A DNA stretch of 63,031 nt, the filler included, from Neoconidiobolus thromboides FSU 785 (taxonomy: Eukaryota; Fungi; Entomophthoromycota): the NCBI GenBank assembly GCA_025603075.1. It is 3 parts of 3 records of this genome, joined end to end, with 100 filler letters (N's around TTAATTAATTAA, not from the genome) between each part and the next. Parts side by side here need not be neighbours in the genome. Positions count along the whole stretch, not along the records: positions 46,585 to 63,031 come from MU626591.1; 2 more parts are not named here. One strand, given 5' to 3'. The notes beneath the pieces are model-generated. The model did not search any database. It was not told the DNA's origin and worked only from the letters and a program-made list of their open reading frames with translations. This document shows, one piece after another, positions 46,585-63,031 of this stretch; positions within the stretch are counted from its first letter, which is position 1, and the number at the start of each line of letters is the position of its first letter. Both the position numbers and the translations under genes were made by a program.

Positions 46585-46756
46585 CAGAATCTTCAGTTTG
46601 AGCCCAAACATCAATTTGATCAAGAACTGGGTTTATTTTTGCATTAGTTTTAAATTGAATAACTTTTTGATCAGTATAAATAGCTTTGGTGGATGGACCA
46701 GCGATTACTGAAGAGATAACAGCTAAAGTAGCAAAAGCAATAGATGTGAATTTCAT
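46585..46756 (-). CDS. Secreted M14A metallocarboxypeptidase, 5' fragment (runs into the contig break)
   Basis: Signal peptide and prodomain start; DNA identical to the 62606 gene from AAAGCTATTTAT onward; family assigned via that copy. Confidence 0.8.
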
Positions 46757-48066
46757 GTTTCAACAATTTTTAATATATTTTTAGATATATTTGTATACTT
46801 TATATAGTCTACTACTATTTGGTGGTTTTAATAACAACTGAAATGTTACATAGTCTACTTATGAATATTATTTTTACTGTATTAGAATGTGTTGCATAAT
46901 TATTTAGCAAACTAACCCAAACAATGTTATTAAACCACGTAATTTTTATGTTCGATTTGTTTTTTTGCTCTTTTATGGCATTTTTCTTTATCACATGGTA
47001 GTCTTTTGATTTAATTATATAAGGAATCAATCATTTAGGATATATTCTTCTACTGTTACCTCAATATTGAACCATTGTTAGCACAGATTAGCTAATTTTA
47101 AATTATTTGTAATGTTCAAGCTATACAAATGGAAAATCTATTATGATAGAAACAAAATACAATAACATTTATGATCAATCCTAGTTCTGATGATAATTTA
47201 TTTTATTGGAAAATCATTGCCAAATAAACCTACAAATCTGCTATATGATTTCTTCAATCTAGTAATTCCTTAGTCTAGGAACAGATTAATCGCCTGCTTT
47301 TTTAAAATTCTATACTTAGATGGGATATTTTTTAATATTACAATATAGATAAATAATTAGTATAATGGGATGATCATTTATGGTAGAAGCAGAAGAATGA
47401 CGAAACCAATTTAATGTTTTAGATGATAAGCTATTTAGATGATTCATAAACAAATTTTATTGTTTATTTGACAATATTCTAATGTGTGTAAATGATACAA
47501 CGTGATTAGTGTTTTTATATGTTCTATCATTAAAACAGGGTATTTGAATTTGAATTTGAATTTGAATGTTTACCTCAAATTTTTAGCTTTTATAAATTCA
47601 ATTAGGCTGAAGCACTATCGAAAAAATTACAAAACATCCAATAGATTACACTTTTATAAACACATCTACAAACAAAAGTTTTATATTGTAAGTACAATTC
47701 ACATATTAAAACTATTTTAAACTCCCCAGGAAAGTAATAGTAAATCTAACAGGATGCTTTCCTGTGTGAATTTGGTTACAATATAAGTTATTTAAAATGT
47801 TTTAAAAATAACTACGGTTTTATGATAAACTATAGAGTACATTTTTATATAATAGGTCTGCCACATGTCAAATAGTTAAAAGTCAGTTTTCAATAAAATG
47901 AACAACCTTCTACCTTTAATTTATAAGCTAGTATTAGCCCTTCAAAAGTAGAGTTTTATAACAAAAACTTTTAAACACTGAACGAAGAAAAGTTATAATA
48001 AAAGTTTATTTAAGTAATAGTTAAATGAATATGGTGCTTTTAAAAGTGCTAATAGAGCTAATAATA

Positions 48067-49039
48067 TTAGTTTCTATATAATTTGTTGTAATAGTTGCCT
48101 ATCATTTTATCGTATCTATTGGTATAGTATTTCTTATTATCATTGGTATAGATTATCTTATTGTTATTATAGTTGTTCGCTAACTTATTATACTTATTTT
48201 TATATTCTATTTTTTTGTTATAGAATGACTATTTTGTGATTATCTGTATGATAATCAGATTTCTTATCATTACATCAAATATTAATATATTTCATCTGTC
48301 TATTATTGGAATTTTAATATTTGTTATGGTCATCATTTTAGAATTATCCAGGTTATAATTAGATTCTATATCATTATAAACATTAGCTGTTTTTTCGTAC
48401 CTATTGTCCAACTAATGTTTTTTTAAAATCTCTGGCTTTATTAGAGTATCTATCTTTTTCAGAGATTTATCTTTATTAAAGTAAATACTATTGTTGGTGC
48501 AATTATCGTTATTGGGGTAGTTACCTATCTTATGGTTATCAACTATCTTTCCACGTACATTAATATAAACTTCTTTTTTGTGATTCTTGGTCTTATTAGA
48601 GTAACTATCCTTCTTTGAATGATTTGAGACTTGATATTCTTTCTATAATTATTATCTTTGTTTCTTCTATATTTTATTTTATGCTATGATTTATAACTGC
48701 TAATGTATTTATCGTTATTTTGACCTTTGTTATAGTTATTATTATATTTGTCTTTATAATTAAAGCTTCACTTATCATCATCATCTTTATCTTGATCCCA
48801 TTCATAGCCATAATACTATAGTTATTATAATTATCATGGTTAGTATAGTTTTCTCAAACTTTTTCAAATTTCTTCGCTTTATCTACAATAGGAGGACTTG
48901 GTACTTTATTTTGATCATCACTTTAGACATATAGTAAATTTGCCAATAGCTTATGAAAGCCTGGTTCATTAGTTAGAATATGGGTACTTGATACTAAAGG
49001 AATGGGAAGAAAAGTAAAATTACAAGATTTAATAGATAT
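48067..49039 (-). pseudogene. Pseudogene paralog of the Tyr/Asp/Asn/Lys-rich secreted protein at 60127
   Basis: ATA replaces ATG; ISIKSCNFTFLPIPLVSSTHILTNEPGFHKLLANLL vs MTIKASIFTLLALTLISSTPIPATKSGLNGLLSNLL; in-frame stops; end NRYDKMIGNYYNKLY vs NGYEKKEDNYSNKSY; 3' flank is also similar. Confidence 0.85.
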
Positions 49040-60126: not shown

Positions 60127-61038
60127 ATGACTATCAAAGCCAGTATCTTCACTCTCCTCGCTCTTACTTTAATATCAAGCACTCCTATCCCAGCCACTAA
60201 ATCTGGACTTAATGGGTTGTTATCCAACCTATTAGGTGGCCAGAGCGATAATCAAACTATTCAATTTATTACTCAAAATAAAGCACCAGCTCCCGCTGCT
60301 GTTGCTATGGATAAAGTCGAAAAGTTTGAAGAAATTAGAGAAAATTATAGTAAACATAATGGACATGATGGATATGACAAGTATAATGACTACCATGATG
60401 ATTCAGACTATAGTAAGGAAAATTATGATAACTATGGCGTTAAATATAATGATAAATATGATGATAACTATAACGATAAATATGATGATAAATATGATGA
60501 TAACTATAGCAATGACAACTATAATGATAATTCATATGATAAAAAAGAGCTATATAGAAGAAATGAAGATGGCAGTTATAAAAATGGATATCAAGTTTTA
60601 GACTATTCAAACAAAGATTATAATAATAAAGCTAACAATTATAAAAAAGGAGAGCATAGTAGCGGATATGAAAAGGTAGTGGATGACTATAAGATGATGG
60701 ATAACTATTCAAAGAAAGATAGCTATTCGAAGAAGGACAATTATTCAAAAAAGGACAACTACTCTATGAAGGATAGCTATTATGATAAAGGTAGTGACTA
60801 TAAAAAATCCGAATACAATAATGGATACGAAAAAATAGCTGATGATTACAATAATAAGAAATCTGATTATCGTTTGGATAGCTATTCTAATAACAAAAAG
60901 ATGGAATATAGTAATGGATATAACAAAATAGCGAATAACTATAATAACAATAAAATGAGCTATTCTAAGGGCAATAACATAAATTATAGTAATGGATATG
61001 AAAAGAAGGAAGATAATTATAGCAATAAGTCATACTGA
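60127..61038 (+). CDS. Secreted low-complexity Tyr/Asp/Asn/Lys-rich repetitive protein (303 aa)
   Basis: Signal peptide; YDDNYNDK-type, KKDxYS and [NS]GYEK..D[DN]Y repeats; no Cys. Confidence 0.85.
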   Translation: MTIKASIFTLLALTLISSTPIPATKSGLNGLLSNLLGGQSDNQTIQFITQNKAPAPAAVAMDKVEKFEEIRENYSKHNGHDGYDKYNDYHDDSDYSKENYDNYGVKYNDKYDDNYNDKYDDKYDDNYSNDNYNDNSYDKKELYRRNEDGSYKNGYQVLDYSNKDYNNKANNYKKGEHSSGYEKVVDDYKMMDNYSKKDSYSKKDNYSKKDNYSMKDSYYDKGSDYKKSEYNNGYEKIADDYNNKKSDYRLDSYSNNKKMEYSNGYNKIANNYNNNKMSYSKGNNINYSNGYEKKEDNYSNKSY

Positions 61039-62605
61039 ATATAACCATTATTAACTCTATTCTTACTTTTAAAAATATCATAGTCATTTATTTCTTATCT
61101 CTAATAAATTTATTATTTTAATTATTTATTTAATATTTAACTATTTTATATTAAAACTACTTGAGCACCAGCTCACTCTAAACTTACGTTTTCATCAAAA
61201 TTGAATTGAAACTATACAATTAATACCTAATGCTTCCTTTTTATGCCTTTAATGGTCAAATTACTTTAATATTCTGGATTTTTTAGCTAGTTTTATTATT
61301 TTTTTAATCGGACCTTTATTATCTTTTATTATTATACTTTATTTTGTTTAATTTTAGTCAGAGCTATTATGTAAGTATTTTTCATCAGCCTTATTAAATT
61401 CAAGTTTTGTATATAGTCTAGTTGTAAAAATGTATAGGAAATAAGAAGAGTTATTTGGCAGAATACACCTGTACAGAAAGCAACTCTGGATAGTATGAAA
61501 TATTTTTTTAAAATGACCAATTTATAGCTTTTGTTCATTGCTAAGTTATTTTAGAAAACACATGTCCAAGGCAATATCTATTGAAATGTTATTTTATAAA
61601 TGTTTATTATTTTTTTATTTAGTTTAATTTTCAATTCGACTATTATAGAAAAACTCGGGTTTTTACAAGGTCAATAGAAACATTTGTAAATTGGTTGTAT
61701 ACCAAATAAAGATTAGTTTGCTATGTAAGTAGCAATCATAATCGAAACCATTTGACTTTACTCTTAAATATCTTAATAAAAAATCATATTATTCAAACAT
61801 TAAAATATTTCATCTCATAATAACAATTCACTGAGCCCATTATTTATAAGATCCTTTAATTCTTGACTATAAATATAAAATTAGATAAATGTTTGATATA
61901 CTAATCCTAAAACTTAATCTATAAACTATACAATAAAAAGTAAGACACCAAAATATCGATATTTTGCTCTTAAACATTAGAAATTATCACCTTGCTTTAC
62001 TAAATATTCAAAAGGATTGAGCTATTATATCAAGTTTTATATAATTATTCAATATTTATCATTTATAAGACATTTTTTGCTTTATGTTTCTAAATGGAGT
62101 AAAAAGTTCATTAGTACTTTTATCAAAGAGGGTGTTAAAGTAAGTATTATTTTGTGGTAGCTCACATTAATAAATTAAAACAGATACAACGAAATTAGGA
62201 TATATAATATTAGTCATATGTACTTCTTTGAATCACATTACTAATTAGAACTGTTTAAAATAGAGGGATTACATTAATAATAATCTAATTTTAGGATCAA
62301 GAAAAAAGGATACATAGTTCATGACCAATTCATTTTATAAATGAGTTGGGTCAAAGGGCTGTTTTATGCTGAATATAAAGATCATGAAAATAAAAACAAA
62401 AATAGCTGAGGATGTTCAATTAGATATTTACTAATTATATTTATTTTAGTTTACTTAAAATAATCATACCTTTTACATTAATGTATAATAGACTATATAC
62501 TATTGATTTTCCTATTTAACATAAAATCAAAATCAAAGTTATCAAATACAAAAAACTATATAAAGGATAAAACTATAAAAAATATTATCAGAAATTGCTT
62601 AAAAG

Positions 62606-63031
62606 ATGAGACTCACATCTATTGCTTTTGCTACTTTAACTATTATTGCTTCAGTTCTCTCTAGCCCATCTACTAAAGCTATTTATACTGATCAAAAAGT
62701 TATTCAATTTAAAACTAATGCAAAAATAAACCCAGTTCTTGATCAAATTGATGTTTGGGCTCAAACTGAAGATTCTGTCAGTGCTCGTGTCACCCCTTCT
62801 CAATTAGCTTCATTAAAGAAAGCTAATGGTGGTTCTTTAGAATACAAGACTCTGATTGAGGATTTACAAAGTCAAATTTATGATTCATTTTCACAAATTG
62901 AATCGAAAACTGCTAGCGCCGATTGGTTCTCTAATTATCATACTTATGAAGATATCAAAACTTGGTATTCCACTTTAGCCTCATCTAATTCAGATGCAGT
63001 TAAATTTGTCCCATCTATTGGTAAAACTAAT
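62606..63031 (+). CDS. Secreted M14A metallocarboxypeptidase, 5' part (open to the window end; missing from the ORF track)
   Basis: MRLTSIAFATLTIIASVLS signal; prodomain ending YKTLIEDLQSQI; mature start DWFSNYHTYEDIKTWYSTLAS..FVPSIGKT, matching the carboxypeptidase A-type YH..EI..W..L…SIGKT pattern. Confidence 0.85.
   Translation, partial: MRLTSIAFATLTIIASVLSSPSTKAIYTDQKVIQFKTNAKINPVLDQIDVWAQTEDSVSARVTPSQLASLKKANGGSLEYKTLIEDLQSQIYDSFSQIESKTASADWFSNYHTYEDIKTWYSTLASSNSDAVKFVPSIGKTN

What the first reader, a model, noticed from the sequence alone, without database searches (positions are those of the whole stretch)
46585..63031. Mirror-image block: carboxypeptidase <- YDNK pseudogene ... YDNK gene -> carboxypeptidase, with conversion starting after the signal peptide
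Seen: both ends of contig 3 carry the same two genes in mirrored order with similar spacing (about 1.3 and 1.6 kb), and similarity extends into the YDNK 3' flank. The left YDNK copy is dead. The carboxypeptidases differ at many sites in the signal peptide (MKFTSIAFATLAVISSVIAG vs MRLTSIAFATLTIIASVLSS) but are base-identical for the ~100 bp from AAAGCTATTTAT to the contig break. Inference: an old inverted segmental duplication in which only the enzyme body is kept identical by conversion. Because the genes diverge, recombination between the bodies would flip ~16 kb, including the subtilisin, and swap promoter plus signal peptide between enzyme bodies, a possible secreted-protease cassette switch. 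This is the second such pair in 63 kb, suggesting a genome-wide habit.
Basis: partly seen in the sequence, partly recalled or inferred. Interest (0 to 1): 0.75.

Follow-up and report, generated by a model that had tools for sequence, protein, structure and literature searches.

The report
Inverted carboxypeptidase duplication cut by assembly
This whole contig of the insect-pathogenic fungus Neoconidiobolus thromboides carries an old mirror-image duplication of a two-gene unit, and the identical start of the two carboxypeptidase genes ends where a short-read assembler gave up on a family of at least three near-identical copies, so it is ordinary paralogue homogenisation, not a protease switch.

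Summary
The piece is one complete 16,447-bp contig of Neoconidiobolus (Conidiobolus) thromboides FSU 785. Both ends carry, pointing outward, the unit [Tyr/Asp/Asn/Lys-rich secreted protein gene, then M14 pro-carboxypeptidase gene].

- **YDNK copies:** they are 68% identical. The left copy is dead: ATG changed to ATA, five premature stops, four frameshifting indels.
- **Carboxypeptidase (CP) starts:** they differ at 13 of the first 69 coding bases and at none of the next 103, up to the left contig edge (Fisher p = 1.7e-8).
- **Third copy:** a partial CP on a 73-kb contig of the same genome has the left-type signal peptide, one change (I26T), and otherwise the right copy's protein through residue 124.
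- **Contig break:** the left end lies exactly 95 bases after the base that must differ in that third copy. That is K-1 for a K=96 de Bruijn graph, so the break is most likely an assembly branch point inside a multi-copy repeat.

An old inverted duplication is supported. Recent homogenisation of the CP body, probably by ectopic gene conversion, is plausible but shown for only 103 bp of DNA. The "cassette switch" is not supported, because exchange between identical bodies changes no gene product. Interest is low.

The parts
46585..46756 (-). Left carboxypeptidase copy (L). It holds the first 57 codons (signal peptide MKFTSIAFATLAVISSVIAG plus the start of the propeptide) and is cut by the contig edge.
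   Evidence: Open frame from the ATG at 46756 to the edge. Aligned to the right copy.
46585..46687 (-). The 103 nt (coding nt 70-172) that are base-identical to 62675-62777. The stretch ends at the contig break, 95 nt after coding nt 77 (window 46680).
46757..46808 (-). About 50 nt upstream of the left CP start, still alignable to the right copy (about 70-75% identity).
47988..49198 (-). YDNK pseudogene with homologous flanks. The part equivalent to the coding sequence is 48073-49039. The start codon is lost (ATA) and there are 5 premature stops, 4 frameshifting indels and a 114-bp insertion at 48226-48339.
49933..51651 (-). Fragmented amidase-like reading frames in the unique centre. This is either a pseudogene or a gene with many introns.
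   Evidence: Frames listed. One piece (50891-51073) matches Pfam Amidase at E = 2.8e-5, 23.8 bits, below the cut-off of 27.
55762..56919 (+). Intact secreted proteinase K-type subtilisin (385 aa) with an I9 propeptide, in the unique centre.
   Evidence: Pfam Peptidase_S8 E = 2.3e-38 and Inhibitor_I9 E = 3.8e-9. It matches the deposited model P0001 of N. thromboides FSU 785, which lies on a contig of 16,447 bp. Aligned with paralogues.
59966..61126 (+). Intact YDNK gene with homologous flanks. The coding sequence is 60127-61038: 303 aa, with a signal peptide, then a Tyr/Asn/Lys/Asp/Ser-rich repetitive region predicted to be disordered.
   Evidence: (repeat family D1).
62555..62605 (+). About 50 nt upstream of the right CP start, alignable to the left copy.
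62606..63031 (+). Right carboxypeptidase copy (R). It holds the first 142 codons (signal peptide MRLTSIAFATLTIIASVLSS, the M14 activation peptide and the first residues before the catalytic domain) and is cut by the contig edge.
   Evidence: Propep_M14 E = 3e-4, 21.3 bits against a cut-off of 22.1. Full-length relatives are Peptidase_M14. The deposited model is P0192.

Best explanation
**Shown.** The piece is one whole contig of the aphid-pathogenic zygomycete Neoconidiobolus thromboides FSU 785. It holds an old inverted duplication of a two-gene unit: a secreted, disordered Tyr/Asp/Asn/Lys-rich protein gene followed by a secreted M14 pro-carboxypeptidase gene. Both units point outward. Between them lies a 10.8-kb unique centre with an amidase relic and an intact Pr1-like subtilisin. 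One YDNK copy has decayed to a pseudogene.

The two CP genes are about 80% identical in the promoter-proximal region and signal peptide. They become base-identical from coding nt 70 onward. A third CP locus on another contig has the left-type signal peptide and the same downstream protein.

**Inferred.** The CP coding body is a near-identical repeat of at least three copies that the short-read assembly could not resolve. All three copies are cut by contig ends, and no full-length member was found. The left contig end is a de Bruijn branch point, lying K-1 = 95 nt after the base that separates it from the third copy.

The identity on old flanks is best explained by ectopic (interlocus) gene conversion, or an equivalent recent overwrite, among CP paralogues. 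The 5' edge of the converted tract lies at nt 69/70, just past the signal-peptide cleavage region.

Functionally these are ordinary secreted digestive or cuticle-degrading proteases. Their promoters and signal peptides have diverged while the proenzyme stays the same. Nothing indicates a regulated switch.
For: - **Organism and contig:** the subtilisin matches the deposited model on a contig of exactly 16,447 bp.
- **Inverted arms and their divergence:**
- **Step in divergence:** 13 differences in nt 1-69 and none in nt 70-172, Fisher p = 1.7e-8, with 34 third-codon positions unchanged.
- **Third copy:** P0121 (KAI9293866.1, partial, 73,359-bp contig) equals L in residues 1-25, has I26T, and equals R in residues 27-124.
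- **Contig end:** it lies exactly 95 nt after coding nt 77.
- **No full-length member:** the two database searches found no full-length protein with this N-terminus. The best full-length hits are 34-44% identical.
- **Third locus is distinct:** none of the 120 subtilisin relatives listed lies on a 73,359-bp contig, so that locus is probably not a haplotig of this contig.
- **Family assignment:**
Against: - DNA identity is seen for only 103 bp. The third copy is known only as protein.
- The assembler and its K value for this genome could not be documented. K=96 for ALLPATHS-LG is my own recollection, and the 95-nt match, though exact, is a single coincidence.
- A short conversion tract of a few hundred bp would give the same picture.
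- Conversion was not tested against a sister species.
Confidence: 0.62

Rival explanations
1. Only a short local conversion tract, a few hundred bp around the propeptide, is shared. The catalytic domains of the copies are as diverged as the flanks. The contig ends reflect that short shared tract rather than whole-gene identity.
For: The right end runs only 357 nt past the last L/R difference before the contig stops. In a de Bruijn graph, a shared edge ends where the copies differ again. Conversion tracts are commonly short.
Against: If the copies diverged again within a few hundred bp, paired reads would normally bridge the tract. At least one full-length gene should then have been assembled and annotated, and none was found.
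Confidence: 0.2
2. This is an invertible secreted-protease cassette switch. Recombination between the CP bodies flips the 15.8-kb segment and re-pairs promoter and signal peptide with enzyme bodies as a regulated mechanism.
For: Inverted repeats of high identity do mediate inversions in fungi. One example is the ORF-containing long inverted repeats of Candida albicans (PMC6591007). The geometry here would allow such an inversion.
Against: With identical bodies the exchange changes no gene product. No recombinase-sized ORF lies in the contig: the only frames of 150 aa or more are the subtilisin and YDNK genes. No alternative orientation is in evidence. A third, unlinked copy shows ordinary family homogenisation rather than a two-arm device.
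Confidence: 0.03
3. The identity is an assembly artefact. The last ~100 nt of the left end were filled from reads or k-mers of a paralogue, so the left copy's true sequence differs.
For: The identical stretch abuts a contig end inside a multi-copy family. The last 8 nt (nt 165-172) are covered only by K-mers that carry no L-specific base if K=96.
Against: With K=96, K-mers that still contain an L-specific base (nt 69 or earlier) reach nt 164. So about 95 of the 103 nt are tied to the left copy's own signal peptide (reasoning). The arms are otherwise well diverged, so the contig is not a palindromic chimera.
Confidence: 0.1

Closest known systems
Arm-to-arm gene conversion in palindromes and inverted segmental duplications (for example the primate Y-chromosome palindromes; from my own knowledge, not checked here)
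   Same: Two inverted arms around a unique spacer, with part of the arms kept identical although the duplication is old.
   Different: Here most of the arm has decayed: the YDNK copies are 68% identical, one is dead, and the spacers are unalignable. Only the CP gene from codon 24 on is identical. An unlinked third copy shares that sequence, so the exchange is family-wide rather than arm-to-arm.
Long inverted ORF-containing repeats of Candida albicans that cause inversions, loss of heterozygosity and copy-number change through non-allelic homologous recombination (Todd et al. 2019, PMC6591007)
   Same: A fungal genome with paralogous ORFs in inverted orientation, separated by roughly 10-30 kb, at high identity. 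Such repeats are substrates for inversion of the spacer.
   Different: In C. albicans the inversions were shown by PCR. Here no second orientation is known, and the length of the identical tract is unknown.
Interlocus gene conversion among paralogues, with tract edges inside or near the coding sequence (for example Caenorhabditis paralogues, PMC3966223, seen only as a title and abstract)
   Same: A sharp change from diverged flanks to an identical coding tract.
   Different: Only the 5' edge of the tract can be seen here.
Pr1-type subtilisins and M14 carboxypeptidases of entomopathogenic fungi (Metarhizium and Beauveria cuticle-degrading proteases; from my own knowledge, plus the source names)
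   Same: The contig's subtilisin is 45-51% identical to the Pr1A and cuticle-degrading proteases listed. It sits between two secreted M14 pro-carboxypeptidase genes in an insect pathogen.
   Different: No expression or activity data exist for these genes. The CP catalytic domains are not in the contig.

Membership tests
Peptidase M14 (pro-carboxypeptidase A/B-like) | N-terminal activation peptide (Pfam Propep_M14) | tested here: inconclusive
   R fragment: E = 3e-4, 21.3 bits against a cut-off of 22.1. P0121: 21.5 bits. Matches to solved pro-carboxypeptidase A1 and B are weak, E = 0.018-0.9.
Peptidase M14 (pro-carboxypeptidase A/B-like) | Zinc carboxypeptidase catalytic domain with the HxxE...H zinc ligands | not testable with these tools
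   Both copies are cut by the contig edges before the catalytic domain. The full-length relatives found with the fragment (P0122, P0123, P0127) carry Peptidase_M14 at E = 1e-62 to 1e-78.
Peptidase M14 (pro-carboxypeptidase A/B-like) | Secretion signal | tested here: met
   Both copies start with a hydrophobic N-terminus of about 20 residues. This was judged by eye; no predictor was run.
Peptidase S8A, proteinase K-type subtilisin | S8 domain with the Asp/His/Ser triad, plus an I9 propeptide | tested here: met
   Peptidase_S8 E = 2.3e-38 and Inhibitor_I9 E = 3.8e-9. D147, H179 and S331 are invariant among the paralogues.
Inverted segmental duplication with interlocus gene conversion | Colinear homologous arms in inverted orientation | tested here: met
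Inverted segmental duplication with interlocus gene conversion | Sharp discontinuity of divergence that selection cannot explain | tested here: met
   27 differences in 121 columns against 0 in 103, p = 1.7e-8, with 34 third-codon positions unchanged.
Inverted segmental duplication with interlocus gene conversion | Extent and 3' edge of the tract, and paralogues grouping by species rather than by locus in a tree with a sister species | not testable with these tools
Programmed DNA-inversion switch | A dedicated recombinase next to the invertible segment, and both orientations present | tested here: not met
   The only open frames of 150 aa or more in the contig are the subtilisin and YDNK genes. 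Whether both orientations occur could not be tested without reads.

The most novel reading that the evidence does not exclude
At least three M14 pro-carboxypeptidase loci of N. thromboides undergo concerted evolution over their whole proenzyme-coding part. The conversion edge is fixed just after the signal peptide. Promoters and signal peptides therefore diverge, giving different regulation or secretion efficiency, while one enzyme sequence is kept. The inverted pair also makes the 15.8-kb subtilisin-bearing segment polymorphic in orientation among nuclei or strains.
Probability: 0.2. Interest if true: 0.35.

Novelty: new member of a known kind. Interest (0 to 1): 0.2.

Why it matters
**As biology.** This is one more case of birth-and-death plus homogenisation in an expanded secreted-protease family of an insect pathogen. 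It would help anyone counting protease genes in Entomophthoromycotina. The public short-read assembly of FSU 785 breaks in this carboxypeptidase family and holds none of the three copies seen here complete, so the family is poorly represented there.

**As method.** Base-identical stretches that end at a contig break should be read as assembly branch points before they are read as biology. The exact K-1 distance to a variant in a third copy is a simple test for this.

Tried and rejected
- **CP fragment searches:** the 142-aa fragment found only its own cluster among proteins of 78-248 aa. The exhaustive representative search found no full-length member of this subfamily. Ten short partial hits turned out to be unrelated metagenome, JGI/IMG or Logan proteins, none named as N. 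thromboides.
- **Metagenome scan:** a 31-mer of the identical stretch gave no match.
- **YDNK protein:** no homologue at E <= 0.001, no Pfam family, and nothing useful in the ESM Atlas, where the best score was 0.77 and mean pLDDT 0.29.
- **RNA genes:** no tRNA and no Rfam family in the contig.
- **Assembly method:** I looked for how FSU 785 was assembled in PMC7466969 and PMC10079182 and by searching "Conth1". It is not documented there. The papers show only that JGI used AllPathsLG for other Illumina zygomycete genomes.
- **Alternative genetic code:** rejected. A ciliate-type code was considered because the YDNK gene ends in TGA, but the subtilisin ends in TAA.
- **Third copy as an allele of the left copy:** rejected. 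None of the 120 subtilisin relatives listed is on the 73-kb contig, and no full-length R-type CP exists in the databases.
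Full report
**What the piece is.** Positions 46585-63031 contain no N and are 16,447 bases long. The 385-aa subtilisin ORF (55762-56919) matches a deposited model of Neoconidiobolus thromboides FSU 785. 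That model sits on a contig whose length is exactly 16,447 bp (P0001). The piece is therefore one entire contig of that public assembly. The DNA is 21-37% G+C and uses the standard code, since the subtilisin ends in TAA. N. thromboides is an entomophthoralean pathogen with a broad insect host range (PMC9409958).

**Checking the observation.** A self-comparison by blastn and the repeat finder show three inverted homology blocks.
- The CP 5' ends: 62555-62777 against 46808-46585, 88% identical.
- The YDNK gene with about 160 nt upstream: 59966-60880 against 49198-48345, 64% identical.
- The YDNK 3' part with about 88 nt of flank: 60878-61126 against 48232-47988, 73% identical.

Both units read [YDNK then CP] and point outward. 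The YDNK-to-CP spacers are 1316 and 1567 nt. Only about the first 100 nt and the last 50 nt of these spacers can still be aligned. The latter match scores no better than the best shuffled control.

The right YDNK gene (60127-61038) is an intact 303-codon frame. It encodes a signal peptide followed by a repetitive region that is 15% Asn, 14% Tyr, 14% Lys and 12% Asp. The left copy (48073-49039, minus strand) is 68% identical. Its ATG is ATA, it has five in-frame stops, four frameshifting indels and a 114-bp insertion. It is a pseudogene.

**The carboxypeptidase starts.** The left copy (L) runs from the ATG at 46756 to the edge at 46585, which is 172 nt. The right copy (R) runs from 62606 to 63031, which is 426 nt. 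L and R differ at 13 positions in nt 1-69, giving eight amino-acid changes and four silent codons. The last two differences are silent changes in codons 22 and 23. L and R differ nowhere in nt 70-172. Against 27 differences in the preceding 121 aligned columns, this gives Fisher p = 1.7e-8. The identical stretch holds 34 third-codon positions, so purifying selection cannot explain it.

**What the genes are.**
- The R fragment scores just under the Pfam threshold for the M14 activation peptide (21.3 bits against 22.1).
- An exhaustive search with the fragment finds full-length proteins of 410-465 aa at 30-44% identity. Those tested carry the zinc carboxypeptidase domain.
- The catalytic domain itself lies off the contig at both ends.
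- The central gene is a proteinase K-type subtilisin with an I9 propeptide and an intact Asp/His/Ser triad. It is 45-51% identical to Pr1-type cuticle-degrading proteases of Metarhizium, Beauveria and others.
- The YDNK protein has no detectable relatives and is predicted to be disordered. Its long open frame in DNA this A+T-rich argues that it is a real gene.

**A third copy, and why the contig stops where it does.** The best hit of the R fragment is P0121. This is KAI9293866.1, a partial hypothetical protein of the same strain, on a 73,359-bp contig. It carries the L-type signal peptide (residues 1-25 identical to L). It has Thr instead of Ile at residue 26. It equals R at every residue from 27 to its end at 124.

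Both L and R have ATT at codon 26. A Thr codon must therefore differ at the second base, coding nt 77, which is window position 46680. The left contig end lies exactly 95 nt after that base.

In a de Bruijn graph of word size K, the path carrying a variant ends K-1 bases after it. By my recollection K = 96 is the default of ALLPATHS-LG. JGI used that assembler for other Illumina zygomycete genomes (PMC10079182). I could not find the method used for this strain.

I therefore read the left break as an assembly branch point against the third copy. It is not a feature of the genome. All three copies are cut by contig ends, and no full-length member of this subfamily appears in either database search. 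This is what a near-identical multi-copy gene does to a short-read assembly. The third locus is not a haplotig of this contig. None of the 120 subtilisin relatives listed is on a 73,359-bp contig, and an allelic contig would have carried a complete R-type gene.

**Interpretation.** The flanks are old. The coding sequence from nt 70 onward is young or has been homogenised. A gene family of at least three members shares it. Ectopic gene conversion, or an equivalent recent overwrite of one copy by another, is the simplest cause. This part is inference, because DNA identity is seen for only 103 nt and the third copy is known only as protein.

The identity is probably not an artefact. With K = 96, words that still contain an L-specific base reach nt 164. 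How far the identical tract runs is unknown. A tract of only a few hundred bp is a fair rival.

**The switch idea.** Inverted high-identity repeats can flip the sequence between them, as shown by PCR for ORF-containing inverted repeats in Candida albicans (PMC6591007). The geometry here would allow that. But if the two bodies are identical, a crossover within them regenerates the same two genes. The only consequence is the orientation of the 15.8-kb spacer relative to the rest of the chromosome. No recombinase-sized ORF lies in the contig, and there is no evidence of a second orientation. The claim about a second such pair elsewhere in the window concerns sequence outside this piece and was not assessed.

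**Limits.** No fungal DNA collection was available, so the 73-kb contig, read depth and sister species could not be examined. A metagenome scan with a 31-mer of the identical stretch found nothing.

**Verdict.** This is a new instance of a known kind: an inverted segmental duplication with paralogue homogenisation, seen through a fragmented assembly. Interest is low.

Noticed in passing
window 57270-57415 and 59122-59267; also 57681-57782 and 58424-58518: A second inverted repeat pair (146 nt, 86% identical, arms 1.7 kb apart) encloses a pair of ~100-nt direct repeats (80%) and no sizeable ORF. It looks like a non-autonomous foldback or TIR-type element of about 2 kb, lying between the subtilisin and the YDNK gene. 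I saw no clear target-site duplication by eye.
   Followed up: partly
window 49933-51651, minus strand: A string of short frames resembles an amidase. One motif is PLFGVPNLAKGNI. Another is SDSSIGSTAG, at the place where amidases have GGSSGGS. The pieces lie in different frames, and only one reaches Pfam Amidase, below threshold. This is probably a decayed gene, but short introns were not excluded.
   Followed up: partly
window 55762-56919 (deposited model P0001): The deposited subtilisin model is 369 aa. It lacks 16 residues (SSLISAIFAELAPLRQ) that are present in the uninterrupted ORF and conserved in the paralogues P0002 and P0006. The annotated intron therefore looks spurious.
   Followed up: yes
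window 60127-61038: The YDNK protein is an orphan. It has a signal peptide, then about 280 residues with units like NGYEK(I/V)xDDY repeated about four times. It is predicted to be disordered and has no homologue in two very large searches. A tyrosine-rich secreted wall or adhesive protein is a guess only.
   Followed up: partly
window 52632-52665 and 52711-52744: A 34-nt inverted repeat (88%) with a 45-nt loop lies inside a larger weakly palindromic stretch, 52583-52791. Its meaning is unknown.
   Followed up: no
other contigs of N. thromboides FSU 785 (proteins P0002, P0003, P0005, P0006 and others): The strain has many subtilisin paralogues, 52-85% identical to this one, on at least ten other contigs. 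Several contigs carry two or three each, for example the 63,433-bp and 74,342-bp contigs. This is a large, partly clustered protease expansion.
   Followed up: no
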